Assembly: GCA_048013815.1 (NCBI GenBank)
Contig: CM106585.1
Coordinates: 22,940,001-23,004,000, forward strand
Origin: Setoptus koraiensis
Taxonomy: Eukaryota; Animalia; Arthropoda
Reading direction: 5' to 3'
Length of the DNA stretch: 64,000 nucleotides
Shown: positions 41,519 through 60,700 of the stretch, in pieces
Position numbering within the stretch: position 1 is the first letter of the stretch
How the letters are laid out: every line of letters begins with the position of its first letter
Notes under the pieces: model-generated
The model's database searches: none
What the model saw: the letters and a program-made list of their open reading frames with translations, nothing else
Told to the model about the DNA's origin: nothing
Translations under genes and position numbers: made by a program

Positions 41519-41869
41519 ATTTGAGTTGATTTTTTAATTCTATATACTCCAGATCAATAGTAAAATATATTGTACCAAGTGTTACAATTCAATAAGAAAG
41601 TGGGACCAGTGAGAATAATTGTTAATTTATCAAATGATATTATGTGATGCTACAGATTTTTTATGGGAGTGGACATGATAATAAATCAGACATGCAAAAC
41701 ACAGAGAATGGCTGCATCTGAAATGGAGAAAAACGTGCTCAAATCGTTCTCCTCACGGTTGCGCCTGCGCATTGCTCAATATATATTTGAAGTCTACGAA
41801 GCGCGAAATCGAACTGAAATGTTGTTTCAAACAACTTTGTAACAAAAAGATTTGTTGATCTAATTAACT

Positions 41870-42176
41870 TCTTTCGAAAACAAACTGGATCTATTCATAG
41901 GTAAGCCACAGAATCTCAGGTAGCATCTCTTAGCCGACCAAAATCAATTCTTTCTTCGGAAAGAAAAACATTCACATTGTTTAGCATTCAGTTATCAACA
42001 ACAAGTCAGCAAGTCAGGATTCACCACACAATCATGGGAGAGAGCATAACTATTTGATGAGAATTAAGATTTGTTACCGAGGATCATCACCAGACGTTTT
42101 GTTTGTTTCATGAGCAAACCAAGCATCAGACATTTCTAGCATGCTTCAGTATCATGAACTCGCTTTTTTTAGTTAA
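41870..42176 (+). pseudogene. Decayed fragment of the POLRMT 3' end, co-duplicated with V-ATPase a
   Basis: CAGTTATCAACAACAAG matches POLRMT CAGTTATCACAACAATT. Terminal TTTTTTAGTTAA matches the POLRMT stop region, and the last frame ends ..AFFS* versus ..YFFS*. The left boundary is uncertain. Confidence 0.6.
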
Positions 42177-42354
42177 AATCATGATAATGTCATTAATAAA
42201 ACTAACTTGTAGAGCTACCTCAGAACAATTGACGAAGAGTTGTTTGTAGACAGGTAGATTTTCTGATTGATTTCACCGTGATCAACATATAAAGTTGGTT
42301 TCTCTTGATCATTGCGAGACGAACGTGGTAATGATTATTTGCTATGATTGATCA

Positions 42355-44859
42355 TCATTCTACGGCTCCTTGCGAATGTTCCAACTGTAGACTGCTGTTG
42401 AATGAAAATGGCATAAAGATGTGACCTTCGCCTTTGTAAAATTTACTTTGAAATTCGACCCAATGAAGTCTAAGTGCATGCAAGAATGCTGAGAGTCCCT
42501 CCATGACTAGTAGCACAGCTACGGTTACTACAGCCCAAAAGGCAAACACCACATACATCGCAACACCACCAAATATACCTGGTGAGGTCAAGCCTTTACG
42601 CATAACTGACCATAGTACCTCGCTGAGTTGTGCGTGGGCAAGACTAAGAGCCCACAAACGCAGATAACTTGCAGTATGGGATATAGAACCCAGACAATAT
42701 TCTATGGTATGGATAGATTGATGAATAAATAAGTCCATCAGGCCATGCTCTTCATCATTGTGTTTGTCAGTTGATCGACTAGTTGAGTTTTGATCTATAG
42801 TAACTACTACATCACCATCCGTTCCACCATTATCCTGTCGCTGCGAATTATATGCAGCCGATGGTTCTGCAGCTTGTTTATCACGTTGCTTCTTAACTAA
42901 AAACGGTTTCAACAATAACATCCATGGGATGCACACCAATGCAGACAATAGTAAGAATGTCTGCATCGCTTGCTGACCGGGATAAATAGGTGCTAAATGA
43001 CATGGAGCATCGGGGTACTTGTAAAGGAACATATTGATCAACATAATCAATATGGAGGGTGCGCAACTTGAGTTTGAGTAATCATAGAAGAGCCATTTAG
43101 CTACTATCAGTAGCACCATATAACCGAATATTGCAGCCAACCATATAACTCGCGGAATGAATTCAGTTATTATGTCGATTTTGCTGTTGAAAAATTTATG
43201 ATTGACTAATGATAGAGCAACACCGAAGCCCATTTGTGATATGCCTAATATAACGGAAAGTTTCATCTTGAAACTATTATAGAATAAGATTTTGTTCTGC
43301 GAGATGGCCCAAATAGGGTCCATACCAAGTGGATATGGAGATCCTGAAAATGTGTACTGTGGATCAAGTGTGAGATGTTCCGGGTAAAAAGTTGTATTGG
43401 CACCTAGTTTAGGTGGTGACCATGATGTACCAAATATGTTCATAGATTTGGAAAATACATCATTGTAAATGAATCCTGTGTAAATGGAAAATATGCCCAT
43501 GAACAGTATCATGTATCTGCCATTAAAAAACGTTAGCCATATCTCGGATCCGCCAGCTTGCATTAGATTTTTCTCCTTCAGCACCATCCACAAAGCAAAC
43601 AATGACATAATAACTCCGTGACCGGCATCTCCAAACATAACAGCAAATAAAAATGGAAATGTTATTATTGTGTAGGGAGCCGGATTGACCTCTCTATATG
43701 ACGCGATACCGTAGGAATTCACAATTCCCTGAAAACTGCTAGTGACTTTGTTTGTACGATTGTAGGTTGGTGGTGTCTCGTTCGTTTCCATTCTATTCAT
43801 GATTGACGGAACGTTTGAACCCGATCGTTGAGCCGCATTCGCCAAAGCTAGCTGTATTCTTTGAACATCATCAGTGGCGCACCAACATTCGGCAATCAAA
43901 CATTTTTGTGTTACATCTAAATTGAACATGTTCATTGTGTGATAAATTGCTTTCATTTTGTGAACTTTAATGAACCAGGCCTTCATGTTTTTTGCTGCCG
44001 CAACTAAAACGCGGTGCCTATGTTCGTTTGTTTGGCTGAGTACAGTATTTAAGTCTTCGATACGAGATATGACACCACCTATCATCTCTCTTCGCTCTGG
44101 TGGAGTCTCTGGGCACGGATATAGAGAGGCCCTAAAACCTTCACAAATCTTTTTTACTCTGGCCTTCAGTTGTTCTCCTTGGAAAAATATGATGAATACC
44201 GACTTGTAAACATTGTCGCCCGTGTGAGGATCCTCGAGAGGCTGCTCAATTTCCGCTTGTCGCAAAAACACATTACCTCGACAAACTCTCCATAACATAC
44301 GCTCAAAAGCGTGTAATCGTTCTCTCAAGATGACGCCTGCAACAAATCCGAGCCTCGTTTGTGTCTGACCTCCAGCTCTGAGTCCTTCCTCACATAGTAG
44401 CTGTATGCTATCATCAGCCAACGCGCTATCTTGCATCTCATCAAAAAATTGTTGGGTCTTCTTTAGAATGTGACGCAACTCACTTAACTCAAGGTATGAT
44501 TTCTTCAGAACCTCAGCATTTGAATTGACTTCTCTGAGTTCACTTTCTAATTTTTCAAAGTTAGCCTCCAAATCTATCATCTCTCTTTGATGAGGTGCTT
44601 CTGGATTATCTCCTGTTTCAAGCATTGGTATACCATCCTTTTTTATTTCTTTTTCAAGGTAACGCAATTTTCTTTGAATTTCATCGCAACGTCTAACCTC
44701 ATTGACAAATTTACGCTGAAATGCATTGGTATCTGGGTTTAAATCACGGAATTGTACTAGACCCAACTCTCCTAATTCCGACACCGTGTTGTAAGCTGAT
44801 TCCGATTGGAGGAACAACTGCGACAGTTGCATCTCCTCACTCCTGAAGAGAGCCCCCAT
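42355..44859 (-). CDS. ATP6V0A1: V-type proton ATPase 116-kDa subunit a (copy 1), single exon
   Basis: MGALFRSEEMQL, ASYLRLWALSLAHAQLS and LRLHWVEFQSKFY motifs. Confidence 0.96.
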   Translation of the reverse strand: MGALFRSEEMQLSQLFLQSESAYNTVSELGELGLVQFRDLNPDTNAFQRKFVNEVRRCDEIQRKLRYLEKEIKKDGIPMLETGDNPEAPHQREMIDLEANFEKLESELREVNSNAEVLKKSYLELSELRHILKKTQQFFDEMQDSALADDSIQLLCEEGLRAGGQTQTRLGFVAGVILRERLHAFERMLWRVCRGNVFLRQAEIEQPLEDPHTGDNVYKSVFIIFFQGEQLKARVKKICEGFRASLYPCPETPPERREMIGGVISRIEDLNTVLSQTNEHRHRVLVAAAKNMKAWFIKVHKMKAIYHTMNMFNLDVTQKCLIAECWCATDDVQRIQLALANAAQRSGSNVPSIMNRMETNETPPTYNRTNKVTSSFQGIVNSYGIASYREVNPAPYTIITFPFLFAVMFGDAGHGVIMSLFALWMVLKEKNLMQAGGSEIWLTFFNGRYMILFMGIFSIYTGFIYNDVFSKSMNIFGTSWSPPKLGANTTFYPEHLTLDPQYTFSGSPYPLGMDPIWAISQNKILFYNSFKMKLSVILGISQMGFGVALSLVNHKFFNSKIDIITEFIPRVIWLAAIFGYMVLLIVAKWLFYDYSNSSCAPSILIMLINMFLYKYPDAPCHLAPIYPGQQAMQTFLLLSALVCIPWMLLLKPFLVKKQRDKQAAEPSAAYNSQRQDNGGTDGDVVVTIDQNSTSRSTDKHNDEEHGLMDLFIHQSIHTIEYCLGSISHTASYLRLWALSLAHAQLSEVLWSVMRKGLTSPGIFGGVAMYVVFAFWAVVTVAVLLVMEGLSAFLHALRLHWVEFQSKFYKGEGHIFMPFSFNSSLQLEHSQGAVE

Positions 44860-46022
44860 GTTTTTGAATTGAGAAGGCTATGCTAGTTTTCTCACAAGAT
44901 GAATCTCATTTACGGGCACGAGTCTTTCCTATAATCTGTAGCCTGAATTTTCTACCCTGTTCAAGCTGAGGAAGGAAATGTATACCAAAACCTCAACTAA
45001 AGTTCAATTTTTCGAATAATTATACTATTTTCTCGAACTCAATCTTGTTGCTTTTGTTTGATTACTGGGTATATATTTAAGAGATTAAAGTTGAAAATTA
45101 GTGGATATTTTGTCAATCTTTCATGTTTGAAATATTGACGTAATAATCAATCTGACCAGGTAGACCAGTCATATATTAGCACAATAATCTCAAATCAGAG
45201 GGATTATTACGTATGTACATAGTAAATTCATGATTTGTTGAAACAAGCCCCCCGCAGATGATAGATCTCGCTGTATTTAGTACGCTAGAAATCGCCAATC
45301 AACTAACTAACCACTAACTAACAATCAACCAAACAATCAAAATTAGCACTGGCAATCCTGATATTTTCGAAACATTTTTTCTTTATTAATGCATTATCCG
45401 TAGATGCTCAGGAGACAATTGTGAATTTAAATAGAGGGTACAACTTCAGAAGATACTAGGAGAGGTTTCGATTTTTTTTCTGCCGGAGTTGGGAACAGGG
45501 CCTTGTCTTGTTCCTGGTACACTGGAGAGTTCAAAAAGACTCACCAGCGGGAAAACGAAGTTTCTGAGACCCTGACTAATGTGCTTCCAATTAACCTCTC
45601 CGTTTCACGGTGAAACTTTCACCTCATTTCTGTCCTATCACCATGATCTCTATTCTTGATCTGCCTAATGTTCGAATCGCCTTAGTTCAGAATGGTAACA
45701 TTGTTCGTTTTCCTTATCTAGCCCGATCGTTTCCGCACAATGGCCGCTTCTGATGCAGTTAAAATTTGTTTGTTTGAAAATAGCGCTCTAGTCGCGAAAA
45801 TAGGTACTACTGATCATATGGTTGTTCATTATTCATTTTCATTCCAAATCCATTCTTTAAATGCCTCATTCGCATCTAACAAATTGTAAACAAGTCAATC
45901 TTGGGCTCTGCATCACAGACCCGGAGCATTATCGATCTCTAATATCAGTTCGAACTGACTATTCTCTTTTCATTATTGACTAATAATTTTCTAGTTAGAC
46001 CGAGAAGCATTGTAGTTCAATC

Positions 46023-47303
46023 ATGTATATACACGACGATATTAGGGATAACAGACTTTTAGCTCCCGAGCTCAAGTCAATGGAATACCCAACATTGAAG
46101 GTACCTTATGAAATCTTAAACAAAAAATATAGAACATCTCAGAAGATCATTGATCGTGAAGTTAGTTATCTCAGCCAATCGTTACAAGAATCAGAGATCC
46201 TTGTTCAATCACTTAGTAATGCAAACGGGTACCAAAGACAATCAGATGAGAAAAATTCCAGTTCCAGTATTTCTCAGGAACCAGAACCGGCTAGGGAAGT
46301 CATAACAAAACTGTTCGACGGGGTAGTTGACAAACTAGGAGTGCTAAAGCGAAAGGCTGACGATTCATTATTAGACGAGCAAGGAGCTGCACAGGTATGT
46401 AAACGTAGATTAGAGCATCTAAAGGATGGTTGTTACAATGCTTCAAACGAAATTTCATTTAATGCTTGGAAAAAGAAACGTCTGGATCGGATGCTGGTTG
46501 ATTATCTGCTTCGTAATGGATACTATGAGTCGGCCATGAAGTTAGCTCGTCACTCAAATATCGGTGATATCACCAATATAGAGTTGTTCATAGCGTCTAG
46601 GCAGGTCGAAGATAGTCTGATGGCGAGGGAGACGGACAAATGCTTAGCTTGGTGTCACGAGAATAGATCTAAGCTTAGAAAAATCAAGTCAACTTTAGAA
46701 ATTCAGCTTCGACAACAAGAATTCATTGAGCTTATTCGTCAACGTGATTCGATTGGTGCCATCAAACATGCACGAAAGTATTTCCCATCCGCAGATGAGT
46801 CACAACAACAAGAATTGCAACATGTAATGGGAATGTTAGCTTTTCCAAATGATAGAACTAAGGAGCCATACAGATCATTACTGGCCGACTCCAGATTAGA
46901 GCAGCTCAAGGAGCAATTTCGTCGCGAGAACTACACATTATTTGGCTTGAACTCAGTATCTGTATTTTCGGTAATACTTCAAGCTGGACTTTCGGTTTTG
47001 AAAACACCCCATTGTTATAAAAAATCTGGCGGTAGGAATCCCGAGTGTCCGATTTGTGGCAAGATGCTTAACGACTTGGCGAAAGAGCTACCTTACCCTC
47101 ATTGTTCTAGTTCTAAATTGATATGCGCTATAACCGGAGAGCCTTTAAATGAATATAATGCCCCTTTGATGCTACCTAATGGATGTGTCTATGGCGAAAT
47201 AGGACTAAAGTCGATGGCCGAAAAGAATCAGGGTACTGTAATCTGCAAGAGAACTCAGGATAGATTCAAGTTGAGCGAAGCAGAAAAAGTTTACGTAATG
47301 TAA
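46023..47303 (+). CDS. MAEA: Macrophage erythroblast attacher (CTLH/GID E3 ligase subunit)
   Basis: EYPTLKVPYE, LisH (LDRMLVDYLLR), CTLH/CRA, and degenerate RING CPIC..LPYPHCSSSKLIC..P..LPNG. Confidence 0.95.
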   Translation: MYIHDDIRDNRLLAPELKSMEYPTLKVPYEILNKKYRTSQKIIDREVSYLSQSLQESEILVQSLSNANGYQRQSDEKNSSSSISQEPEPAREVITKLFDGVVDKLGVLKRKADDSLLDEQGAAQVCKRRLEHLKDGCYNASNEISFNAWKKKRLDRMLVDYLLRNGYYESAMKLARHSNIGDITNIELFIASRQVEDSLMARETDKCLAWCHENRSKLRKIKSTLEIQLRQQEFIELIRQRDSIGAIKHARKYFPSADESQQQELQHVMGMLAFPNDRTKEPYRSLLADSRLEQLKEQFRRENYTLFGLNSVSVFSVILQAGLSVLKTPHCYKKSGGRNPECPICGKMLNDLAKELPYPHCSSSKLICAITGEPLNEYNAPLMLPNGCVYGEIGLKSMAEKNQGTVICKRTQDRFKLSEAEKVYVM

Positions 47304-47364
47304 ATTTTATTATATCACACTCTGGACTTTAAACTAACAATAAAACGTAGACAAAATGAGAGTA

Positions 47365-48605
47365 TTATCGAGCCTCTTTTTCGGAAGGTTTTCTTCTCGC
47401 AGGACTATCTTTGTAGGTCTTTTGAATAGGACCAATAGCCGCTTTCTCGAAAGCTATTCTATCCAATCTACGAAGATCCTCTGGACCCTGTTGATTCCTC
47501 CTACTCTTGTTGAAGTCTTTCAGCATCTGTGAAAAAGATTTGTCAAGACCTAATGCAGATCGATCATGTTCTATCAAATCAGGTATATTAAATCTCTTCC
47601 TGATACGTTTATTCCTCAATACAGTTGCTTGCACCAAAGAATAAAAGTTGCTCGTAACCCAATAGCATAACATAGCCGCCGGAAAGTCATAGATTATATA
47701 GAAAATACCGACTGGCAAGGCTCTCATCCCCCAACGGATGGGTTTGGTAAAGCTGGCACTCGAACCACCTAGAACGATATAGAAATGCACGAAGATTAGG
47801 AATGGGCACCTAAGAAACTTGAAAAAATGTTTGTTGAGTTATTTGATATGAGCTCACCTCCTTCGGCACCTAGTTCAAGAGATAATAATAGAGTAGAACA
47901 CGTCAATATGGGCAACATGAAAGTTGGGTCCATCACCGATAAATCTTTGAACCATAATAAACCGCCCTCTTTTAGAGATTCCTGGTTTTCAGACAGCGTT
48001 TTGAGAATGGCATACATAGACATAAATATGGGGGCTTGACAAAGAGCGGGCCACATTCTTTGAAATTCAGATACTCCGTGTTCTTTATTTAAAGCTTTCA
48101 ACTTCATCCTGTAGTGTTCAGCCTCCATTGTATCTGAATTATGTAACGCGTCCATCATTTTGTTATTTAATTGAGTAGTTTTAGGCATCAGGTTCATGTA
48201 CACAGTTGTCGTTCGAAGACTATTAATTACAAGAGGTGTCATCAATGCCCGCAAAGTTAATGTTGTGATCGATATGCTAGCCCACCAAGGAAATATCTCA
48301 TGTAGGTAGTTAAGATAATACATAACGGGCCATGTCACGAAGAATATAATCTTGCCTTGCAGAGGCATGAGCTTCCATGGTATGATGCCTCCAATTACTT
48401 CTGGCTTTATTAGCTTGATCCCTGGGTCTATATTCTGAAGCTCTTGGAGATCCTTAGTTTTAGGCAGATCGGAATAATAAGAACATTGACATATCCTCGA
48501 GGCATTCGCATTGATTTTTCCGTATGTCATCGGTTTTAGTGCTACTGATTCTCGCCGAAGTGATCTCGTTGCAAGATAAGAGGTTATTCTGATTAAGGAA
48601 CTCAT
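47365..48605 (-). CDS. OXA1L: Mitochondrial inner-membrane insertase OXA1; two exons (48605-47858 and 47768-47365), 89-bp intron, about 383 aa
   Basis: PWWASISITTLTLR, QAPIFMS and WFKDLSVMDP motifs. A GTGAG..TTCTAG phase-1 intron (47857-47769) joins the two ORF-track pieces in frame. Confidence 0.93.
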
Positions 48606-48982
48606 TTTGAGGTTTCGTTCGATATTGAATTGTGTATCAGATAATGATCATAGATGATTGCAGAAGGATAAAAATAATAACATAGCAGGTTAATCTGCCG
48701 GACTATATTGCTTTATTGACCAGCCAGTCGAGATACTTCTACTGAGCTAACCACACGTTTTAAACATGTGTCATTCATTACATGACTGCACACAATCCCC
48801 ACAGAAGCTTTCAAGATTCAATTTTGCCGCTGAAAAAACAAGTGGAAGCACAAAAACGTGAGGATCTTTTTCGCATATGGCCACAGTTGCATTTGTATCC
48901 TGCAGCTGCACCACTGAGGTCCGCCTTACTTCGGTTGTATTGTATTCTGATCGACTGATATCGGCAAATTAATCTATTCAAA

Positions 48983-49564
48983 ATGGCCAAGAACAAGAAT
49001 TCGTCACAAACAGACCAGCCTGTAGTTAACACGAGCCAACAAAACAAGCAGGCCGTTCAAGAAGAGGAAATTATTGTTATTGACAAATGGGACTCAGGAC
49101 AAGTCAAAATGGTTTTGGATGAAACTGCTAAACGTCATATTTTAACCAAGTTTAACTACGAGGAATCGAACTTCTTGGTAGATATCAGACTCTTTTTGTG
49201 CTTGCTACCTGTGAGCTCGGCATTTTTCGCCTTGTTCTACGACTTTATGCATCCATTTCCAGAATCTGAACAAGTGCTACGAGGATGTGTTTACGCCTAT
49301 ATTGTCCTCATGGTCATTCTGACAGTATATTCAACATATGTGGAAAGCAATACTATTTTAATAGCCTACAAAGGAAAGAAAAAGATCAAAGTTTCATCCA
49401 TAATGAAAAGATTTAATGATAAGTATACATTGATTGTAGGTGATAAAAAATGGACGAAGTCAGTCGCGAACTATTTTGACGTCAACGGAGAGTTCTTGAT
49501 GCAAAAGTTTGAAAATGACGTGGCGAAGTTGCACAATCCATCCTCGAAGAAACACTCAGAGTAG
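48983..49564 (+). CDS. SPCS2: Signal peptidase complex subunit 2 (SPC25)
   Basis: IDKWDSGQVKMVLDE, two TM segments around DFMHPFPES, and KSVANYFDVNG. Confidence 0.93.
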   Translation: MAKNKNSSQTDQPVVNTSQQNKQAVQEEEIIVIDKWDSGQVKMVLDETAKRHILTKFNYEESNFLVDIRLFLCLLPVSSAFFALFYDFMHPFPESEQVLRGCVYAYIVLMVILTVYSTYVESNTILIAYKGKKKIKVSSIMKRFNDKYTLIVGDKKWTKSVANYFDVNGEFLMQKFENDVAKLHNPSSKKHSE

Positions 49565-49567
49565 ATC

Positions 49568-52500
49568 TTAATTATTGAGTCCTTTCTTCATGAATGTATT
49601 CCACTCGAGCTGACAATGTGCTCCACTATATACGATGTGTACGTGCATCTTGTCACTGTAAGGTAGATTCGGTAGAAGCTTAGGTGAAATAAGAAAATAT
49701 TGCGAGGCACTCGCATCTGCTGTCTTGACCAATAGTTCAAAAACTTTCCTTTCATTATCTTGATCCATACCTTGATTAATTTCATCAACACATCTAAAAG
49801 GCACGGACGTGATAGTTTGTAACGCCAACATATAAATCATGGTTGCAACACTTCTTTCACCTCCACTCTGTCGGGTTGCGGACAATGGTGTTAGTTTTTC
49901 TTCTTCGCGATACTTTACCATGATCTTTATACCGTAACCCGCAAAGTTGTCGGGATCATCTACCGGTACATCCAATTCGACTTGACCATCATAGTGGAGC
50001 TTCCTCATGAAAGATGTATACTCGTTGTTGATTACTTTCACAACCTTGTCTAGATTTGGCAACCATTGAGCTTTAATTGAACTTCTGACTTCCTTTATAT
50101 TTTCCAGTTCTGACTGCATCTTTTCTTCTTTTTCTTTCTTTTCCTGAATCTCCTTTTTTTGACGATTATATTCACTCATTAGGGTCTTGTCATTTGACAT
50201 GAATATTGACTCTATCTTAGCTTGGAGGTGCGTCAACTCGTCCTCCATCAGTTCGATAGTCTCGGGTAGGGTTGCGAACATCTCCGCCGTCTTTGGAAGC
50301 AACTTTCCTTCAGAAAATTCCTGCGCTAGAACTTGAGTGGTTTTTCTCTCCTCTGATTTCAATTCACTTTCAACATTGTGAACTTGGGCGGATATTGTGC
50401 TCAGCTCAGATTGAATCTTTGTTGTATCCTGTTTCGACATGTCATATTTCTTCTGAGCACCTCTTTGATTCTTCTCGGCCATGCGACACAAGAGCTTATT
50501 TTTGAGTAAACGACGTCTACAATCTAGATATACATCGACGTTTTCATCTAAGGTAGAGAGATAGCTGATGTATTTCGCATTGGAGTCTTCCACCGATTTC
50601 ACAAAGATCTTCCGCTCATTGACTAGATTTATTTCTTGCCTCTCAAGTTTGCTGAGCTGTTCCTGTTTGATTTGTATTTTCGCTTGCAAACTCTTTCTCT
50701 CGTCATGTTTTTGCTTGAGTTCAGTTCTTTTTTCCACCAATTTCTGCCATTCCTCACGCGTATCGTTTTGAGCTTTATGTTTTTCATCGTAGATATTTTT
50801 TGATTCAGTTAATTTTATACTAGCTTGGTGGATTCTTTCTTTGCATGTTTGTAGGAGCTTTCTGTCCATGCTGAATCTAAGAAATTGAGCTTCTCTAATT
50901 CGATCCTTGGAAGTTATTTTTTGCCTATCATAACGAGAGTGGGACAAAGCGTAAATGTCTGGTCCAACATAAAAGCGAGGACATAACTCGCTTAATTCCT
51001 GCAATTGGGCACTAGTAATGCTTTCTGAAACTGGAATGCTGTGGAAATTGTGTATAGCGCATAAATAGCTAAGTATTGGTTCTGGTGCCTCTACTAGCTC
51101 CAGTAAAGTGTATTTTACACCGCATTGCTTGAATTTTTGGACAAGAGATTCATTAATATACTCGTCTGGACATTTGGGTGGTGCTAGAATAACGTTGACA
51201 TTGACTCCCAGTTCCTCACGAACTCCTCTTGTAAAAAGGGTTAAATCGTTGGGATCCTCACAAACGAATGCACAGAGATCATGTTGTGGAATTGAATTCT
51301 CAACCTGCCGCGTAAACTGAGGATCCTTCACATCAATCTCACACAGCATTGGCATATAAATTTTTCTCTTGAATCTACTTTTATTTTTTTGCAACCATTC
51401 AGCTGCTCTGGCCACCTTTGGGAATCGTGAGCGAAGAAGTTCTGTTTTTTTATCGGCAACAGACTCTATCCGCCTGAGCTCCTCCTTCCGTTGTTCCATT
51501 TCGTTTTGGCAGTATCTTGCGGTATCATTGGCTTTTTGAGCTTGTTGAGCTAGTTTTCTCAAATCATCCTTTTTACTTTCAATATCCTTCTCTATTGAAT
51601 AAAGCTCTCTGGAACAATCTTGATCTACGAGAGTATTAAGATTCTTTTCCAGAGTAGCCAACTCCTTCTTAGACTCTTCAATGTTGTTTTTCCTTTCTTG
51701 CTCACTCTTTTCCTTCTTCTTGAATGCTGTGTAGGTTCCAGACATGGCCGACAAAACCTCTCGTATTTGATTATTACATTTATCGATATAATGAGCCTTC
51801 TCTACGGTCTCAGACTGACTCTTTTTGATGAGGTTCGTAAATTTTTCAACATTTGCTTTTGCTTCATCAACTTTTGTCTTATAAGGCAATGCTTGATCTC
51901 TGAGCTTTTTTAGGTCTACTTTGAGTGCTTTTTCTTTGTCCCTATATCCATCATATACAGATTTAATTTTGAGATATTTAGTATATTGAATTTTTTGTCT
52001 GATTGTATTTTGCTTGTCACGCAAATTTTCCCTTTCTCTGAGTCTCTTTACTTCAGCTCTACTTCGCTCATAGTTTATCTCAACTGCTCTGAGGCTCGCT
52101 CTCACTTGAGCTAGCTCCACTCCAACGGATTTAATCGTATTAGTGGTATCGACTAGCTTTTGGTGATCTTCCACCAATTGTCTATCACCAGAAGCTAATA
52201 ATGTGTTGAGCAACAGTTCGCTTGTATTCATCTTGACGAAATGGGTCACACTATCTTGAGGGAGAAATTGGCATAAATTGTCAACTTTGATGTTGAGCTT
52301 GTCAATAAATTGTTTTATCTCTGACTTTTTTGAAATTTTACCATTTAGTTTCCACTCATTCTTGTGCTCCATAGTGTGCTCTGTTTTCTTCGTGATCGTT
52401 ATCTTTCTCTCAACTATAAAGTTACTGCCTTTTGAATTGAACAACTCAATTTCCGTCTTGCATATGCGCTGGCCATTTCTGACTAAATCAGTGACAGAGT

Positions 52501-52756
52501 TGGCTCTACCAGTGAGTGATACCTCGCCGGCTAGTCCAACAATGATGGAGCAGACCACTGCGCTCTTACCAGTTCCATTTGGACCAAGCACCATATTTAG
52601 ATGAGGACCGAGGAAAATTTCCAATTGCTTGTATGTCATGAAATTCTCCAACTTTATCCTAACTATGGATCCTTCATTGAATTTATTCTCGGAGCCCTGA
52701 TGCACCTCGTCGATGCCATTATTGTCGGATAATCTAGCCCGTTTGCTCGGGCGCAT
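49568..52756 (-). CDS. SMC5: Structural maintenance of chromosomes protein 5, single exon
   Basis: Walker A GPNGTGKS, coiled coils, QSGGERSV signature, and FRCVDEINQGMD Walker B/D-loop. Confidence 0.96.
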   Translation of the reverse strand: MRPSKRARLSDNNGIDEVHQGSENKFNEGSIVRIKLENFMTYKQLEIFLGPHLNMVLGPNGTGKSAVVCSIIVGLAGEVSLTGRANSVTDLVRNGQRICKTEIELFNSKGSNFIVERKITITKKTEHTMEHKNEWKLNGKISKKSEIKQFIDKLNIKVDNLCQFLPQDSVTHFVKMNTSELLLNTLLASGDRQLVEDHQKLVDTTNTIKSVGVELAQVRASLRAVEINYERSRAEVKRLRERENLRDKQNTIRQKIQYTKYLKIKSVYDGYRDKEKALKVDLKKLRDQALPYKTKVDEAKANVEKFTNLIKKSQSETVEKAHYIDKCNNQIREVLSAMSGTYTAFKKKEKSEQERKNNIEESKKELATLEKNLNTLVDQDCSRELYSIEKDIESKKDDLRKLAQQAQKANDTARYCQNEMEQRKEELRRIESVADKKTELLRSRFPKVARAAEWLQKNKSRFKRKIYMPMLCEIDVKDPQFTRQVENSIPQHDLCAFVCEDPNDLTLFTRGVREELGVNVNVILAPPKCPDEYINESLVQKFKQCGVKYTLLELVEAPEPILSYLCAIHNFHSIPVSESITSAQLQELSELCPRFYVGPDIYALSHSRYDRQKITSKDRIREAQFLRFSMDRKLLQTCKERIHQASIKLTESKNIYDEKHKAQNDTREEWQKLVEKRTELKQKHDERKSLQAKIQIKQEQLSKLERQEINLVNERKIFVKSVEDSNAKYISYLSTLDENVDVYLDCRRRLLKNKLLCRMAEKNQRGAQKKYDMSKQDTTKIQSELSTISAQVHNVESELKSEERKTTQVLAQEFSEGKLLPKTAEMFATLPETIELMEDELTHLQAKIESIFMSNDKTLMSEYNRQKKEIQEKKEKEEKMQSELENIKEVRSSIKAQWLPNLDKVVKVINNEYTSFMRKLHYDGQVELDVPVDDPDNFAGYGIKIMVKYREEEKLTPLSATRQSGGERSVATMIYMLALQTITSVPFRCVDEINQGMDQDNERKVFELLVKTADASASQYFLISPKLLPNLPYSDKMHVHIVYSGAHCQLEWNTFMKKGLNN

Positions 52757-54605
52757 TTTGTCTAATATTTGTTTATATTATCAGGGAAAATTACCAAGGT
52801 CGGAGGAGATTAGTATAGCGGTGGCGGTAGGTGCAAAAGTATAATGAACACGTTATGACTACACTAGTAGAATTCAGGTTCTCAACAAATAATAATAACA
52901 ACAATAGAATCATACAACGCAATGCAATAAAAATAAAAAAATGCGTGCAGAACGGTATGATAACGTGTGCATTCTAGAACGTGAATGGGACCTCCTGAAG
53001 ATGAAAATCTGCTAGAGGCGGGGAAAGCGTGTTGATTTGCACGATTTGCGCGGAGTGTCTCGATGAATGTTTGAAGTTTGTTTTTCTTTCACTTTTCGAA
53101 TATTGTGAGCATTTTAATGCGTTGCTCGCGCCTCTAGCGGAATTTTAACGCACAGAGCTCATTGACATCAAAAAAGGCGCACAATTGTGGCATTCACAGC
53201 GGCACACAAGGAGAGCACACTGACGGGTTGAGCGGTCCTTGCATGATTGTTGCACCCTGTATGTATTCTTGTCGAATGTGACGCCGAGTTCGAAAATGAT
53301 GGTCATTTTCTCCTGAAATTCACGGTTTTCGAGATGTCACCCAACTTCCGACTTATGTGAAGTTTTTTTTTTTTTTGGCAAAAAACGGGCGCGCACCCGT
53401 AGATATGGCCTCGGCACGCACTAATTTGTGGAAATTATTTCAATAAAATCTCATTCATCTCAAAAACGGCTGATCTTTCAGAGAGAATGAATTGCATAAT
53501 GCATTTATTCGTACTCCCTGTTGGAAGAGCTTGCGATTTGATAGGTCGAATATAGAAAAGCGGTGTCATAGCAAATGGGCGGTCATTGTCAGCTCTCGCA
53601 AGTTGTGGGCCGCCGGATCGCGTTCAACACGTTGTGAACTGGAGTCTAAACCTTTAGAACCTAGGCAAATGGAACTGATTTTTGAACTGCGATCCTGTGG
53701 GCGTGCCAAAATCGCTATTCCCGGCCACCAAGAGGATAGTTTTTCCGAACAATTTTCATGAATCTATACGCGCTTCACTTGGTGTCTGTGATGCTCTATG
53801 AGCACATTTTTGCAAGCGACTAGAAAATTTCTTCTCGGTTTCTCAATTAGTGCGCTTGCGAGCATTGACTATGGAGGCGATAAGCGCCGCGAGAATTATT
53901 CAATTTTCCCTTCTCCCCTGCTGGATTCAAGTGTTGGCCTCTACGAGTTACCCCAAACCGAAATATTCCATTTGCCCTCTGCAGTCTTTTGTAAGTTGTG
54001 AAATCAAGTCCGACTCGGCACAGCAAGTCCATGCTCCAAGTTCAACTTAAATTGTGCTTAATTGTAAGTCTATTTCAAAGTTAGACTGGGACTCACAAAC
54101 TGGAACTTGCACCACGACGCTGCAAGTCCTACAGTCCATCCCTATGCTGCAATCTAGATTGGTTTGCGAAATCTCCGCGAGGGCGGCGCCGCACTGGATT
54201 ATCCTTTGAACGAGATGTGAGCAGCGCCTCTGGTAGATCTTCTATAAAACATCGGTGCACATTGCAAAAATCTCAAGCAGGACGCACTGTTTTAGTGCAT
54301 AGAATGCACTGTGAAAGGCAGCGCGGCATAATCTGTAGAAACTTGACTATCTGATCTTCACACCCTATACATCTACCATTCATTTCAATTGGCGCTTCAT
54401 ATTTAGTGAGTACTTCTTATTCTTTCTTGCGACTCACAAGTTGTAAGCCCACTGAACTAGATCCATTGAGCGGAAGCCCAGCTCAACAGCACAGTCCAAC
54501 AACTTGGACTGAGGCTGTGAGACTCATGTACACCGTAAAGTCTAGTCGGTTTTTCAAGTCTCAAGTCCCAAGTCCCCATCAACATTGGAACACCCTAGCA
54601 AAGTA

Positions 54606-54841
54606 CTGAGTGCGTTCTTCCCAATGCACTTGAGTGAAGTTCATTTTCGTTCCACCAGGGGCGCTCAGGGAGTGTTTAGATGCACACCCGATCAGAGAGT
54701 ATACGTTAAATGTTTATTTATTTTGATTCTATTGAACATTCACTGCACTCTTTGGTTGTTTGTGCATCCGAGTACGCTTTGCGCACTCCTAGAGGAGTAA
54801 AAATAAACTTCGCCCAAGTGCATTGGGAAAAACGCACTCGG
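54606..54841. mobile_element. 236-bp MITE with TA TSD (Tc1/mariner-type), about 200 bp upstream of V-ATPase a copy 2
   Basis: TIRs CTGAGTGCGTTCTTCCCAATGCACTTGAGTGAAGTT and the reverse complement CCGAGTGCGTTTTTCCCAATGCACTTGGGCGAAGTT, flanked by TA at 54604-05 and 54842-43. Confidence 0.8.
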
Positions 54842-55038
54842 TATAAAGGCCGCAATCATATTAACATATGCCCACTAATGAAATAGTATAATCCTGATCT
54901 AGTAGTACACAGATTGGTAACTCTTTCAATTATAATTATTATCACTATCGTTACTATTATTATTATTACTACTATTATTATTATTAACATTGATATTGTT
55001 TAAGATTAATATATTAATAGAGAATTATCATTATCATC

Positions 55039-57543
55039 ATGGGGGCTCTCTTCAGGAGTGAGGAGATGCAACTGTCGCAGTTGTTCCTCCAATCGGAATC
55101 AGCTTACAACACGGTGTCGGAATTAGGAGAGTTGGGTCTAGTACAATTCCGTGATTTAAACCCAGATACCAATGCATTTCAGCGTAAATTTGTCAATGAG
55201 GTTAGACGTTGCGATGAAATTCAAAGAAAATTGCGTTACCTTGAAAAAGAAATAAAAAAGGATGGTATACCAATGCTTGAAACAGGAGATAATCCAGAAG
55301 CACCTCATCAAAGAGAGATGATAGATTTGGAGGCTAACTTTGAAAAATTAGAAAGTGAACTCAGAGAAGTCAATTCAAATGCTGAGGTTCTGAAGAAATC
55401 ATACCTTGAGTTAAGTGAGTTGCGTCACATTCTAAAGAAGACCCAACAATTTTTTGATGAGATGCAAGATAGCGCGTTGGCTGATGATAGCATACAGCTA
55501 CTATGTGAGGAAGGACTCAGAGCTGGAGGTCAGACACAAACGAGGCTCGGATTTGTTGCAGGCGTCATCTTGAGAGAACGATTACACGCTTTTGAGCGTA
55601 TGTTATGGAGAGTTTGTCGAGGTAATGTGTTTTTGCGACAAGCGGAAATTGAGCAGCCTCTCGAGGATCCTCACACGGGCGACAATGTTTACAAGTCGGT
55701 ATTCATCATATTTTTCCAAGGAGAACAACTGAAGGCCAGAGTAAAAAAGATTTGTGAAGGTTTTAGGGCCTCTCTATATCCGTGCCCAGAGACTCCACCA
55801 GAGCGAAGAGAGATGATAGGTGGTGTCATATCTCGTATCGAAGACTTAAATACTGTACTCAGCCAAACAAACGAACATAGGCACCGCGTTTTAGTTGCGG
55901 CAGCAAAAAACATGAAGGCCTGGTTCATTAAAGTTCACAAAATGAAAGCAATTTATCACACAATGAACATGTTCAATTTAGATGTAACACAAAAATGTTT
56001 GATTGCCGAATGTTGGTGCGCCACTGATGATGTTCAAAGAATACAGCTAGCTTTGGCGAATGCGGCTCAACGATCGGGTTCAAACGTTCCGTCAATCATG
56101 AATAGAATGGAAACGAACGAGACACCACCAACCTACAATCGTACAAACAAAGTCACTAGCAGTTTTCAGGGAATTGTGAATTCCTACGGTATCGCGTCAT
56201 ATAGAGAGGTCAATCCGGCTCCCTACACAATAATAACATTTCCATTTTTATTTGCTGTTATGTTTGGAGATGCCGGTCACGGAGTTATTATGTCATTGTT
56301 TGCTTTGTGGATGGTGCTGAAGGAGAAAAATCTAATGCAAGCTGGCGGATCCGAGATATGGCTAACGTTTTTTAATGGCAGATACATGATACTGTTCATG
56401 GGCATATTTTCCATTTACACAGGATTCATTTACAATGATGTATTTTCCAAATCTATGAACATATTTGGTACATCATGGTCACCACCTAAACTAGGTGCCA
56501 ATACAACTTTTTACCCGGAACATCTCACACTTGATCCACAGTACACATTTTCAGGATCTCCATATCCACTTGGTATGGACCCTATTTGGGCCATCTCGCA
56601 GAACAAAATCTTATTCTATAATAGTTTCAAGATGAAACTTTCCGTTATATTAGGCATATCACAAATGGGCTTCGGTGTTGCTCTATCATTAGTCAATCAT
56701 AAATTTTTCAACAGCAAAATCGACATAATAACTGAATTCATTCCGCGAGTTATATGGTTGGCTGCAATATTCGGTTATATGGTGCTACTGATAGTAGCTA
56801 AATGGCTCTTCTATGATTACTCAAACTCAAGTTGCGCACCCTCCATATTGATTATGTTGATCAATATGTTCCTTTACAAGTACCCCGATGCTCCATGTCA
56901 TTTAGCACCTATTTATCCCGGTCAGCAAGCGATGCAGACATTCTTACTATTGTCTGCATTGGTGTGCATCCCATGGATGTTATTGTTGAAACCGTTTTTA
57001 GTTAAGAAGCAACGTGATAAACAAGCTGCAGAACCATCGGCTGCATATAATTCGCAGCGACAGGATAATGGTGGAACGGATGGTGATGTAGTAGTTACTA
57101 TAGATCAAAACTCAACTAGTCGATCAACTGACAAACACAATGATGAAGAGCATGGCCTGATGGACTTATTTATTCATCAATCTATCCATACCATAGAATA
57201 TTGTCTGGGTTCTATATCCCATACTGCAAGTTATCTGCGTTTGTGGGCTCTTAGTCTTGCCCACGCACAACTCAGCGAGGTACTATGGTCAGTTATGCGT
57301 AAAGGCTTGACCTCACCAGGTATATTTGGTGGTGTTGCGATGTATGTGGTGTTTGCCTTTTGGGCTGTAGTAACCGTAGCTGTGCTACTAGTCATGGAGG
57401 GACTCTCAGCATTCTTGCATGCACTTAGACTTCATTGGGTCGAATTTCAAAGTAAATTTTACAAAGGCGAAGGTCACATCTTTATGCCATTTTCATTCAA
57501 CAGCAGTCTACAGTTGGAACATTCGCAAGGAGCCGTAGAATGA
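55039..57543 (+). CDS. ATP6V0A1: V-type proton ATPase 116-kDa subunit a (copy 2), single exon
   Basis: The 834-aa translation is identical to copy 1. DNA was identical at every segment spot-checked. Confidence 0.96.
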   Translation: MGALFRSEEMQLSQLFLQSESAYNTVSELGELGLVQFRDLNPDTNAFQRKFVNEVRRCDEIQRKLRYLEKEIKKDGIPMLETGDNPEAPHQREMIDLEANFEKLESELREVNSNAEVLKKSYLELSELRHILKKTQQFFDEMQDSALADDSIQLLCEEGLRAGGQTQTRLGFVAGVILRERLHAFERMLWRVCRGNVFLRQAEIEQPLEDPHTGDNVYKSVFIIFFQGEQLKARVKKICEGFRASLYPCPETPPERREMIGGVISRIEDLNTVLSQTNEHRHRVLVAAAKNMKAWFIKVHKMKAIYHTMNMFNLDVTQKCLIAECWCATDDVQRIQLALANAAQRSGSNVPSIMNRMETNETPPTYNRTNKVTSSFQGIVNSYGIASYREVNPAPYTIITFPFLFAVMFGDAGHGVIMSLFALWMVLKEKNLMQAGGSEIWLTFFNGRYMILFMGIFSIYTGFIYNDVFSKSMNIFGTSWSPPKLGANTTFYPEHLTLDPQYTFSGSPYPLGMDPIWAISQNKILFYNSFKMKLSVILGISQMGFGVALSLVNHKFFNSKIDIITEFIPRVIWLAAIFGYMVLLIVAKWLFYDYSNSSCAPSILIMLINMFLYKYPDAPCHLAPIYPGQQAMQTFLLLSALVCIPWMLLLKPFLVKKQRDKQAAEPSAAYNSQRQDNGGTDGDVVVTIDQNSTSRSTDKHNDEEHGLMDLFIHQSIHTIEYCLGSISHTASYLRLWALSLAHAQLSEVLWSVMRKGLTSPGIFGGVAMYVVFAFWAVVTVAVLLVMEGLSAFLHALRLHWVEFQSKFYKGEGHIFMPFSFNSSLQLEHSQGAVE

Positions 57544-57719
57544 TGATCAATCATAGCAAATAGTCATTGCCGCGTTAATTTTTCAATAGTCGAGAAATCA
57601 ACTCTATATGTTAATCAAGATAAAATCAATCAGAAAAACTACCTGTCTACAAATGAGTTTTTGTCAATTGTTCTGAAGTAACTATACAAGTTAGCTTTAT
57701 TAATAACATTATTATGATT

Positions 57720-60700
57720 TTAACTAAAAAAGTAGGTTGACTTGAGCACTTGTCTTATATCTAGTTGACCAGTTTCAGGGGTTGCCTTGAAAATAACAAC
57801 AGGATCGATCGTCGGACGAGACCCTTTTATTCCCTCAAATATATCGATGGCGGTGTCCTCTTCATTTTGTTGGTAGGCTCTGTATGCTTTAGCAAGTCGT
57901 CTATCATTCGACACCTTCTGACTCGAGATCCCGCCTTTCACCGTATTTTCTTCACCCACGTAGTAAGCCATGAATTGTTGTGATAACTGTTCAATCAACG
58001 GCATTGAATGCAATGATATAAATTGCTCTCGGCATATTTTGTTCATTATGTCAACTGTGCTAGCATGAGTCCAAAAACAGTCATGCACGGAGACAAATGT
58101 GACACCATTTTTCTGGCAAAACAAAGATGTTAACATCATATGAGTTGAATCTAATGAATGGATGTAATTTGGTGGAAAGGCGCTTCTCTGTTTTGCTATA
58201 TTTGGTCTCGAAGAAATGTCACTATAAACAGTGCACTGATTTGCCTCGATAGTAGATTCCGAGCTTGCTACTCTACTACCCGAATGTGAAGGTTTGTGAT
58301 ATGGTTGAGTAACAGGGAAACCCAACGGTGTTGACCATCTCACAGGTTGATTGAAATGAACACCAATAGTGAAAGCGCACAATTTCAGCCATTCTTGGAT
58401 CCTTTGTGAAGCTTCAAAAAGTGTTCCTATTGATTGGAACACTTTGCCCACCACGTACGAGGATGCTGCCATTATTTTATGCTGAGGGAAGTCTTTCACA
58501 TCTTTCAATTGCCCGGACACTTGCTCTCTAGCTCCGAAGCGTGTCACTCCATAGACAATAGTCATAACAGTTTGCTTTATCAATTTTCTATTGATACGTC
58601 CTTTCAACAGAACAGCCATCTCGAGTCCATTTTGAGCGTCTTCATCTCTGATCTTCTCGACATGTTCGACGACTTTACTGTAAACATCTTGGGGCGAACC
58701 AAACGGGAGTAAATTGACGGAGCGACCACCTTCTAGATCACGACCTAAGGCAGCATAATGCTGTAGGCCGTTGCAAGAGCCATCCTGATGTATAGGAAAG
58801 TGGCTGACATACTCTTCAGGGTTGCCACTTTTGATCGCTTCGGAAATCTCAATACAACAGGCCAATGTTTGCCATGGCTCCTCACTTTTTCTCCACCAAG
58901 AACTTCCCTCTAAAGGTTGTTCAGCAGAATTTATAATCTCTGGGAGTATTGAGTTGGCAAATTCAAGGCGCTGCTGCAAATTGGCTCTTTTCTTGAGCCC
59001 AGTCAGATTAATGAGATGTATTTTAAGCCAATCCAAGCCTTTTTGTCCCAATGGTCTTCCTTTGGAAAAAAGAAGTAAAGATCTAGCTAAATCACCGCCA
59101 AGATGATTAAAATGGGGTGGAACAGGATATGTACGTCCTCTGAAATCTAAATTGTGTGGATACCACAGAATCCTTGACCTATACTGATTAGCTATGGATA
59201 ATCTATACAGACAATCGCACCATAATGAGTACATCTCACGTTTTTTTTGTTTGAATTTCAACCTGTCCTTTTTGAATGATCGCTTATCCTCTATGCTAGC
59301 ATCCGTTGCGAGAAAATCTGGCCCTTTCCCTAGTACAGTTTCATCTAGTGGGATTGCTAGTTCTTCATCTCCTCCATTTCGGAATATTCCTATGGCTAAA
59401 TCTAGAATTCTTTCATTAACTCGCCACGGACATAAACCCAGCGCAGTCAAGGAGTCTAGTGTTGGATACAGCTCTTGGGAAGCTACATTACCAAAGATTT
59501 CTGCCTGCGTAAGTTCTGGCTGTCTTACCAGATCAACTGTCGATGTCAGATAACCACCGATGTCAATAGATAGCCATGGCATGGGAGGCGCGAGTGATGG
59601 CAAAGATGAATAGTCAAATCTTAAATTAGATCGACAACCTTCTTCGTAGAATTGTGTGAAATTAGGATGTGCCCTAAACTCTTCCTTAACCTTGTGGGAT
59701 GATTCTACTTGTACATAGGCAGTATAAAACGCACATGTCAATCTTTCAGAATCATCTGATAGAGGGTTGAGAAAACTTGGGTTAAATTTAGCCTCCTTAA
59801 GTAAGATACTGTACAGATATTTTCCAACAGATGATGTAATGTGCCTCGGCCATCGCGATAGTTCCCGCTGTCGATCGGTATATATGGAGTAATTTTTGGT
59901 ATCACAGGCTTTTCTTTGAAGATACAACCTTGAGTTGATTTCACCCATCAAATCAGGATTATTGCAATAGTGATGAACGTAATTGTCATAAAGTTTCTGT
60001 AGTTCTTGATATGAGCCATCTCTTTGGGCTCGGTCTCTTAGGTAACGGACCATGACTTTGCGTCCCAGTTCAAAGTGGAGATGATTAGTTTGAGCGCTGT
60101 ATCTCTGACTGACAGCTCCTGCCTCTAGTTCATCAAGTAATAAATCAACAATAAACTTTCTGTCTACTGAGCAAAGATAGGGATATAGATGAACTCTATC
60201 ATCTTCCGCATACTGATTTTGCATTGCGTTCAAGTCCTTCTCTATAACATTCATAAAGTTCCGTCTCCAAATTTTTGAAGCTTTTTTCCACATCGCAGCG
60301 GCTTGTAAGGCACGATTGGAGTTGATCTTTTGGTTGGCAATCGATTTGATGGGCACACTTGAGTGGCTTTCCATGAGACGTTGCTCATTTATCCAAGTTT
60401 CGATTGAATCTAGATTCGCATCACCAGTAGGATTATATCTTTGGTTATCTACTTCTGACAGTGTTTGTAATAGATTACAGTTGTATCCCATGGGTAAATT
60501 ATAGAATTCATCTTCGAAATCATGAATAACTCTCCGTACAAGATTTTTGACTATGGTCCTCTCTGATGGATTTAAATAGATGGGTTGAAATATTTTTCTT
60601 GGGTCTACTCCACCCGATTGCATGTCATTTAGTATTTTAGTTAGATAACTAATGTCAGGTTTCTTTTGCTTCGCCAACGCCAATAATGTAAGAGTCTGTG

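What the first reader, a model, noticed from the sequence alone, without database searches (positions are those of the whole stretch)
42336..57562. Two V-ATPase a genes form an apparently perfect 2.5-kb inverted repeat with diverged flanks, a signature of gene conversion
Seen in the sequence: 42336-44860 is the reverse complement of 55038-57562. The proteins are identical and the DNA was identical in every block checked, synonymous sites included. Identity starts 1 nt before the ATG and stops 19 nt after the stop codon. The next ~170 bp of 3' flank are homologous but only about 85% identical by hand count, the POLRMT relic beyond is far more decayed, and the 5' flanks are essentially unrelated. 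Inference: an old duplication whose coding sequences are still being homogenised by intrachromosomal conversion. This would keep a dosage-duplicated, stoichiometric subunit uniform while regulation diverges.
Basis: partly seen in the sequence, partly recalled or inferred. Interest (0 to 1): 0.78.

Follow-up and report, generated by a model that had tools for sequence, protein, structure and literature searches.

The report
Twin mite proton-pump genes kept identical
A tiny plant mite carries two mirror-image copies of its only V-ATPase subunit a gene, 10 kb apart. Their coding DNA is identical letter for letter while the neighbouring DNA is 17% diverged or unrelated, which is a clean but ordinary case of one gene copy overwriting the other (gene conversion).

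Summary
Window 42336-44860 is the reverse complement of 55038-57562, 2525 nt with no mismatch. The identity runs from 1 nt before the ATG to 19 nt after the stop of two intronless 834-aa V-ATPase subunit a ORFs.

Outside that tract, about 170 nt of 3' flank is homologous at 83% identity (JC distance 0.19, transitions to transversions 23:6). This homology ends abruptly 12 nt inside the 3' end of the POLRMT gene. No further POLRMT relic exists. The 5' flanks are unrelated, and both carry MITEs or simple repeats.

The host is an eriophyoid gall mite, probably Setoptus koraiensis. These two ORFs are its only V-ATPase a genes.

The best reading has two steps:
- An older inverted duplication, copied from the right site to the left.
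- A later non-reciprocal homogenisation of the whole ORF (gene conversion).

Selection alone cannot explain zero differences at about 536 synonymous sites. Several points remain unproven:
- That both copies are expressed.
- That conversion is still ongoing.
- That the identity survives a check against raw reads.

The parts
42336..44860 (-). Left arm of the exact inverted repeat. It holds V-ATPase subunit a ORF 42355-44859 (834 aa) and is the derived (daughter) copy.
   Evidence: Exact match to the reverse complement of 55038-57562. ORF. PF01496 matches residues 27-820 against profile positions 1-815 of 815, 1100 bits.
55038..57562 (+). Right arm of the exact inverted repeat. It holds V-ATPase subunit a ORF 55039-57543 (834 aa) and is the parental copy, convergent with POLRMT.
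   Evidence: The own-genome search finds only these two places, both at 100% identity.
42165..42335 (-). Diverged homologous 3' flank of the left copy. It ends with a 12-nt copy of the POLRMT 3' end (3 codons plus the stop codon).
   Evidence: Alignments A1 and A3. 141 of 170 aligned sites are identical, JC distance 0.19, ts:tv 23:6. The proximal 31 alignment columns are 65.5% identical and the distal 140 nt 86.5% (Fisher p = 0.012).
57563..57731 (+). Diverged homologous 3' flank of the right copy. It is the intergenic spacer between the V-ATPase a stop and the POLRMT stop, plus the last 12 nt of POLRMT.
   Evidence: The flank occurs only at these two places in the genome.
57720..61073 (-). 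Mitochondrial RNA polymerase (POLRMT/RPO41-like), 1117 aa, single copy.
   Evidence: PF00940 matches residues 673-1117, covering the profile to its last position, and PF14700 also matches. One place in the genome.
44861..55037 (.). 10,177-nt unique spacer between the 5' ends of the two copies. It carries a CTLH-domain gene (46023-47303 +), an OXA1/60KD_IMP-like gene (47796-48605 -), SPC25 (48983-49564 +) and an SMC/AAA_23 gene (49568-52756 -).
   Evidence: It contains no N run.
44891..45595 (.). Old MITE copy 31 nt upstream of the left copy's ATG. The family's terminal inverted repeat is CTNACAAGGTAAACCTCC.
   Evidence: At least 40 related places genome-wide at 70-79% identity. Alignment A4 defines the ends.
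54929..55037 (.). ATT-rich simple repeat that abuts the right copy's ATG.
   Evidence: Tandem Repeats Finder reports 54929-54986. Genome-wide simple-repeat matches cover query positions 627-738.
54604..54843 (.). MITE-like inverted repeat (97-nt arms, 74% complementary) in the right copy's upstream region. A further dispersed repeat lies at about 54145-54373.
   Evidence: repeat I3. Searches find at least 15 and at least 30 dispersed places respectively.
39761..41518 (-). CCT/TCP-1 chaperonin gene in two exons. It is the outer neighbour of the left copy. Its upstream region, 41519-42164, is unique DNA.

Best explanation
The locus holds a real inverted duplication of the mite's single V-ATPase subunit a gene.

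Step 1 (inferred from sequence): a segment of at least 2.7 kb was copied in reverse orientation from the site next to POLRMT into the CCT-CTLH intergenic region about 10 kb away. The segment comprised the ORF, the 176-nt intergenic spacer and the last 12 nt of POLRMT.

Step 2 (inferred): the copies diverged. The only flank that still aligns now differs by about 0.19 substitutions per site.

Step 3 (inferred): one or more non-reciprocal recombination events between the inverted copies (interlocus gene conversion by double-strand-break repair or synthesis-dependent strand annealing) overwrote one ORF with the other. This left 2525 nt with no difference. The tract could not run past the ATG because no homology exists upstream; MITE and microsatellite turnover have remodelled both upstream regions. 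On the 3' side it ended 19 nt after the stop.

The outcome is two identical proteins behind unrelated upstream regions. Because the repeats are inverted, a crossover between them would flip the 10-kb spacer rather than delete it, which makes the pair stable.
For: - Exact identity over 2525 nt, with sharp edges.
- The adjacent homologous flank is 82.9% identical, with 29 substitutions and ts:tv 23:6. That bias is typical of real evolution and not of long-read error.
- The chance of no synonymous difference at flank-like divergence is about 1e-38.
- The flank occurs only at these two places in the genome, so it is not a transposon.
- Both copies lie in one gap-free stretch. The only N run is at 4127-4626.
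- Each copy has unique outer neighbours, and five real genes lie between them.
- The POLRMT Pfam match runs to the protein's last residue. The 12-nt POLRMT end beside the left copy is therefore the copied piece, which gives the direction right to left.
- Only two PF01496 places exist in the 48.76-Mb genome.
- The nearest public relative, P0001, differs from both copies at the same 12 residues.
- The protein tree shows one eriophyoid lineage and no second deep paralogue clade.
- Earlier notes of this scan report many similar tracts in this genome. These are leads only.
Against: - No reads could be examined. If the genome is the Setoptus koraiensis assembly, it was built from noisy CLR reads of a pool of more than 100,000 mites with Flye 2.6 and short-read polishing (PMC11920263). 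A few true copy-specific differences could have been lost.
- No genome of a sister species was available, so 'copies cluster by species' was not tested.
- GC3 of the gene (0.387) is no higher than its neighbours' (0.36-0.47), so recurrent GC-biased conversion leaves no trace.
- The coincidence of the 5' edge with the ATG is explained only by the limit of homology, and that explanation is itself an inference.
Confidence: 0.8

Rival explanations
1. Assembly or polishing artefact. Either the two loci exist but their true ORFs differ slightly, and consensus building or short-read polishing made them identical, or one copy is a false duplication created by mixing haplotypes of an inversion polymorphism.
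For: - The probable source assembly used CLR reads, Flye 2.6, two rounds of NextPolish and a pooled sample with 1.13% heterozygosity.
- C2 is 24,533,333 nt long, which matches that paper's 24.53-Mb scaffold N50.
- The window's 500-N gap fits 3D-DNA scaffolding.
- Zero differences in 2.5 kb is lower than that heterozygosity would suggest.
Against: - A 2.5-kb repeat is fully spanned by reads from a 30-kb CLR library at about 496x coverage, so each copy gets its own consensus.
- The 170-nt flanks are paralogous, 17% diverged with a transition bias, so two loci truly exist.
- A haplotype chimaera of an inversion would give both copies the same 5' flank. Instead, the left copy joins to 31 nt plus a MITE plus the CTLH promoter, and the right copy joins to a microsatellite plus the SMC-like gene's upstream region.
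- Even if a few differences were erased, the ORF would still be far more alike than its flank, so conversion would still be needed.
Confidence: 0.1
2. Homogenisation templated by RNA or cDNA. A reverse-transcribed mRNA of one copy recombined with the other copy, so the identical tract follows the transcript or ORF and not a random conversion tract. The same process is proposed for the massive intron loss in these mites.
For: - The tract matches the ORF almost exactly, from -1 to +19.
- Both genes are intronless.
Against: - A cDNA would carry the 5' and 3' UTRs. A boundary at -1 and +19 would need almost no UTR.
- The 5' edge is explained equally well by the absence of homology upstream.
- There is no poly(A) trace and no target-site duplication.
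- Nothing in these data separates this reading from ordinary DNA-DNA conversion.
Confidence: 0.05
3. A single very recent duplication with no conversion. The diverged 170-nt flank would be unrelated or fast-evolving DNA.
For: The ORFs are identical, as a brand-new duplicate would be.
Against: - The flank is clearly homologous: E = 2e-52, only two places in the genome.
- It has 29 substitutions and includes the POLRMT stop region. One event cannot yield 0% and 17% divergence side by side.
Confidence: 0.03

Closest known systems
Arm-to-arm gene conversion in inverted repeats and palindromes, such as the human Y and X chromosome palindromes (PMC3723533, PMC8981503, listed; abstracts only)
   Same: - Inverted duplicates carrying genes.
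- Arm identity close to 100%, maintained by non-reciprocal intrachromosomal recombination.
- A unique spacer between the arms.
- Inversion, not deletion, as the crossover outcome.
   Different: - The arms here are 2.5 kb, one autosomal-type housekeeping gene, not tens to hundreds of kb of testis genes.
- The spacer is four times longer than an arm.
- No GC-bias signal.
- No population data.
Interlocus gene conversion between young paralogues in small animal genomes, such as Caenorhabditis paralogues (PMC3966223, listed; abstract only)
   Same: - Conversion is confined to the stretch of high identity, often the coding region.
- Flanks are diverged.
- The effect makes duplicates look younger than they are.
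   Different: The whole ORF is converted with no residual mosaic, so neither donor, direction nor number of events can be read from the sequence.
V-ATPase subunit a isoform pairs, such as yeast VPH1/STV1 and Drosophila Vha100-1 to -5 (from general knowledge)
   Same: More than one gene for the 100-116 kDa a subunit in one genome.
   Different: Known isoforms are diverged proteins that send the pump to different membranes. Here the two proteins are identical, so any difference can only be regulatory. No other a gene was found in the genome.
Other conversion-homogenised duplicates noted in this same genome by this scan (XRN1, POU, EGFR, PMCA, SoxD)
   Same: The same pattern of an identical core with diverged flanks, often in inverted pairs. 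One of these tracts also starts at a start codon.
   Different: Those are AI notes that were not re-tested here. This case converts a complete ORF, and it involves the genome's only gene of that family.

Membership tests
V-ATPase 116 kDa subunit a (Pfam PF01496, V_ATPase_I) | Full-length match to the family profile above the curated cut-off | tested here: met
   1100.5 bits against a cut-off of 30.7. Residues 27-820 cover profile positions 1-815 of 815.
V-ATPase 116 kDa subunit a (Pfam PF01496, V_ATPase_I) | Orthology with arthropod subunit a | tested here: met
   83% identity to Fragariocoptes setiger subunit a and 64-69% to other mites, ticks, spiders and insects. It sits inside a single eriophyoid clade.
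V-ATPase 116 kDa subunit a (Pfam PF01496, V_ATPase_I) | Conserved proton-path arginine segment in the C-terminal membrane domain (motif recalled from knowledge of yeast Vph1p R735) | tested here: inconclusive
   The segment ASYLRLWALSLAHAQLS is present at about residues 730-746 (sequence printed). Its equivalence to R735 rests on memory and not on an alignment made here.
Interlocus (ectopic) gene conversion / concerted evolution of duplicates | Two paralogous loci with independent flanks | tested here: met
   The outer neighbours differ (CCT versus POLRMT), the 5' flanks are unrelated, and five genes lie between the copies.
Interlocus (ectopic) gene conversion / concerted evolution of duplicates | A tract much more similar than adjacent homologous DNA, with sharp borders | tested here: met
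   0 differences in 2525 nt against 29 in 170 nt. The borders are at 42335/42336 and 44860/44861.
Interlocus (ectopic) gene conversion / concerted evolution of duplicates | Identity includes synonymous and non-coding sites, so selection alone does not explain it | tested here: met
   About 536 synonymous sites and 19 nt of 3' non-coding DNA are identical.
Interlocus (ectopic) gene conversion / concerted evolution of duplicates | Paralogues group by species while the duplication predates the species split (recurrent conversion) | not testable with these tools
   - No sister genome with both loci was reachable.
- The only DNA orthologue fetched (L003/L004) is single-copy on 32 kb, sits in different synteny, and has saturated dS.
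Interlocus (ectopic) gene conversion / concerted evolution of duplicates | The identity is real at the level of reads | not testable with these tools
   No read data can be reached from here. The reads of the probable source assembly are named in PMC11920263.

The most novel reading that the evidence does not exclude
In this intron-poor gall-mite genome, identical tracts between duplicates may be bounded by ORF or transcript limits. Here the tract runs from -1 of the ATG to +19 after the stop, and another case starting at a start codon is noted elsewhere in the genome. This could arise because homogenisation is templated by reverse-transcribed mRNA, the same process thought to have stripped the introns. 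It would be a live, genome-wide RNA-mediated conversion mechanism in an animal.
Probability: 0.05. Interest if true: 0.7.

Novelty: new member of a known kind. Interest (0 to 1): 0.22.

Why it matters
The practical point concerns dating. Anyone who dates duplicates or counts 'recent' gene duplications in eriophyoid genomes will be misled by pairs like this one. The ORFs look brand new, yet the flank shows a divergence of about 0.19.

The locus also shows that this streamlined mite has a single type of V-ATPase a subunit, present as two identical genes behind unrelated upstream regions that transposons have remodelled. Other arthropods have several diverged isoforms. If both copies are expressed, any division of labour must be purely regulatory. 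That can be tested with copy-specific UTR reads.

As a mechanism it adds nothing new. Gene conversion between inverted duplicates is textbook biology, and by this scan's earlier notes it is frequent in this genome.

Tried and rejected
- POLRMT relic left of 42165. blastn with word size 7 and tblastn with word size 2 and E up to 10 found nothing in the right orientation, and POLRMT is single-copy. Rejected.
The copies could not be grouped by species.
- Metagenome scan. It gave one other eriophyoid locus (L003 and L004, identical ORFs at 84% aa identity). That locus is single-copy on a 32-kb contig and lies between Sec10 and a DEAD-box helicase, so it shares no synteny with either window copy. 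dS to it is saturated, with fourfold sites 28% identical, so it cannot be used for dating.
- Sec10 from L003 was not found in the own genome with that query. This is uninformative.
- Composite-transposon capture of the left copy. A MITE lies 31 nt upstream, but the distal flank 41519-42170 is unique and the 3' flank is not a repeat. Rejected.
- GC-biased conversion signal. GC3 equals that of the neighbouring genes. None seen.
- Rfam scan of the whole window. No hits.
- Haplotype-chimaera (inversion polymorphism) artefact. Rejected on junction logic, because the 5' flanks differ and the 3' flanks are paralogous.
- A splice acceptor at the ATG that could explain the 5' border. The base at -1 is C and no AG precedes it in either copy. 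Rejected.
- The large representative-protein search, structure prediction and the protein atlas were not used. The protein's identity was never in doubt.
Full report
**What is there**

The window is intron-poor eukaryotic DNA with about 40% GC. Two ORFs of 834 aa lie at 42355-44859 (-) and 55039-57543 (+). Both match Pfam V_ATPase_I (PF01496) over the whole profile at 1100 bits.

A direct string comparison shows that 42336-44860 equals the reverse complement of 55038-57562, 2525 nt with no mismatch. The first mismatches fall at 42335/57563 and at 44861/55037. The repeat finder listed 2558 nt at '100%', but that figure is rounded. The extra 33 nt hold 11 mismatches.

**The flanks**

On the 3' side the two copies stay homologous for about another 170 nt, 42165-42335 against 57563-57731. 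There are 141 identities, 29 substitutions and one 2-nt indel, giving 82.9% identity. The Jukes-Cantor distance is 0.19 and transitions outnumber transversions 23:6.

The 31 alignment columns next to the border are more diverged than the distal 140 nt, 65.5% against 86.5% (Fisher p = 0.012). I cannot explain this.

The homology ends abruptly 12 nt inside the 3' end of a 1117-aa mitochondrial RNA polymerase gene, 57720-61073 (-), which matches PF00940 and PF14700. Beyond that point the left flank shows nothing related to POLRMT, by blastn or by tblastn in the expected orientation. POLRMT has one place in the genome. What exists is 3 codons plus the stop codon.

The Pfam RNA_pol match reaches the last residue of the intact POLRMT. 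Its C-terminus is therefore original, and the 12 nt beside the left copy are the copied piece. The duplication went from the right site to the left.

The 3' flank occurs only at these two places in the genome, so it is not a mobile element.

On the 5' side there is no homology at all:
- Left copy: 31 nt, then an old MITE of about 705 nt at 44891-45595. The family's terminal inverted repeats are CTNACAAGGTAAACCTCC, and it has at least 40 related places in the genome. The divergent CTLH-domain gene follows.
- Right copy: an ATT-rich simple repeat touches the ATG (54929-55037). Two further MITE-like dispersed repeats follow at 54604-54843 and about 54145-54373.

Both upstream regions have thus been remodelled by mobile and simple repeats. 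This is enough to explain why a conversion tract cannot pass the ATG. Whether the original duplication ever included upstream DNA cannot be told.

**Organism and assembly**

The best named relative of the protein is Fragariocoptes setiger, an eriophyoid gall mite, at 83% identity. Other mites, ticks, spiders and insects follow at 63-69%.

The genome has 48,755,295 nt in two pieces of 24,221,962 and 24,533,333 nt. The larger piece equals the 24.53-Mb scaffold N50 reported for the two-chromosome assembly of Setoptus koraiensis (PMC11920263). The window's single 500-N run at 4127-4626 fits the 3D-DNA scaffolding used there. I take this as the probable source, not a proven one.

That assembly was made from about 496x PacBio CLR reads of a pool of more than 100,000 mites. 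It used Flye 2.6, two rounds of NextPolish, purge_dups and 3D-DNA.

**Is the duplication real?**

No reads were available, so the argument rests on the sequence.
- Both copies lie in one gap-free stretch.
- Their outer neighbours are different real genes, a CCT chaperonin and POLRMT. Four more genes sit in the 10,177-nt spacer.
- The 170-nt flanks are paralogous and not allelic. They are 17% diverged with a natural transition bias, which sequencing error or polishing would not produce.
- A chimaera of two haplotypes of an inversion polymorphism would give both 'copies' the same 5' flank. They have unrelated ones.
- A 2.5-kb repeat is easily spanned by reads from a 30-kb library, so each copy should have received its own consensus.

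What cannot be excluded is that a handful of true copy-specific differences were lost in polishing. Even so, the ORF would remain far more alike than its flank.

**Mechanism**

One event cannot leave 0% and 17% divergence side by side. At flank-like divergence, the roughly 536 synonymous sites of the ORF would stay identical with a probability of about 1e-38, so purifying selection is not the cause.

The simplest history has two steps:
1. An older inverted duplication of at least 2.7 kb.
2. One or more later non-reciprocal transfers between the copies, covering the whole ORF. This is interlocus gene conversion.

The data do not show whether there was one event or many, which copy was the donor, or whether the process is ongoing. 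GC3 of the gene (0.387) is the same as in its neighbours (0.36-0.47), so long-running GC-biased conversion has left no trace.

Because the arms are inverted, a crossover between them would invert the spacer and not delete it. This is expected, but it was not observed.

**Comparative evidence**

The nearest public protein, P0001, comes from a Logan assembly on a 3023-nt contig. It differs from both window copies at the same 12 of 834 residues. All others are 83% identical or less.

A tree of 36 eriophyoid-type proteins and 4 outgroups shows a single eriophyoid lineage. The window protein plus P0001 sit alone on a 0.15 branch, and there is no second deep paralogue clade. It is a quick tree with SH-aLRT support only.

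The one other eriophyoid locus I could fetch (L003 and L004, from JGI metagenomes) carries a single copy on a 32-kb contig. That copy lies between Sec10 and a DEAD-box helicase, so it shares no synteny with either window copy. Its synonymous sites are saturated against the window gene.

**Function**

The genome holds no V-ATPase a gene other than these two (six-frame search with the protein and with PF01496). Other arthropods have several diverged a isoforms (one search lists more than one for Tetranychus and Panonychus). Here any division of labour could only be regulatory.

No expression data exist here, and a silent copy would also stay intact if the active copy keeps overwriting it.

**Comparison with what is known**

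This is the same process that keeps the arms of sex-chromosome palindromes and many young paralogues identical (PMC3723533, PMC8981503 and PMC3966223, abstracts only).

Earlier notes of this scan describe the same pattern at many other loci of this very genome, including XRN1, POU, EGFR, PMCA and SoxD. One of those tracts also starts at a start codon. These are unchecked AI notes and I use them only as context.

The most novel reading still open is that such ORF-bounded tracts are templated by cDNA, which would link them to the intron loss of these mites. I give it about 5%.

**Verdict**

Gene conversion is supported as the mechanism. The claims of function and of ongoing conversion are unproven. 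It is a new instance of a known process and of low interest.

Noticed in passing
whole genome G000; window 42355-44859 and 55039-57543: Six-frame searches with the protein and with PF01496 find no V-ATPase subunit a gene other than these two identical ORFs. This streamlined mite therefore seems to lack the diverged a isoforms that other arthropods use for organelle-specific pumps.
   Followed up: partly
window 44891-45595: An old copy of a MITE family of about 650-700 nt. The terminal inverted repeats are CTNACAAGGTAAACCTCC...GGAGGTTTACCTTGTNAG, and the family has at least 40 places in the genome. Most other copies are much more alike to each other than to this one.
   Followed up: partly
window 54604-54843 and about 54145-54373: Two further short dispersed repeat families lie upstream of the right copy. 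One is a MITE-like element with 97-nt inverted arms. Each has 15-40 places genome-wide at 70-85% identity.
   Followed up: partly
window 42305-42335 / 57563-57591: The 31 alignment columns just outside the 3' border of the identical tract are 65.5% identical, against 86.5% for the next 140 nt (Fisher p = 0.012). This is a hyper-diverged patch at the tract edge with no explanation so far.
   Followed up: partly
window 4127-4626: A run of 500 N next to a Ty3/gypsy-like 1735-aa ORF (5189-10396). It is probably a scaffolding gap of the 3D-DNA type.
   Followed up: no
window 61532-62452: A class-I phosphatidylinositol transfer protein gene (PF02121). Together with the other neighbours it shows that nearly all genes here are intronless. 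The CCT gene (39761-41122 plus 41213-41518) keeps one short intron.
   Followed up: no
L003 9998-12553 and L004 5344-7899: Two JGI metagenome contigs (Ga0268249_1000266 and Ga0058699_1000643) carry nucleotide-identical V-ATPase a ORFs of another eriophyoid mite, with the same neighbours. Mite DNA therefore recurs in these plant-associated metagenomes.
   Followed up: no
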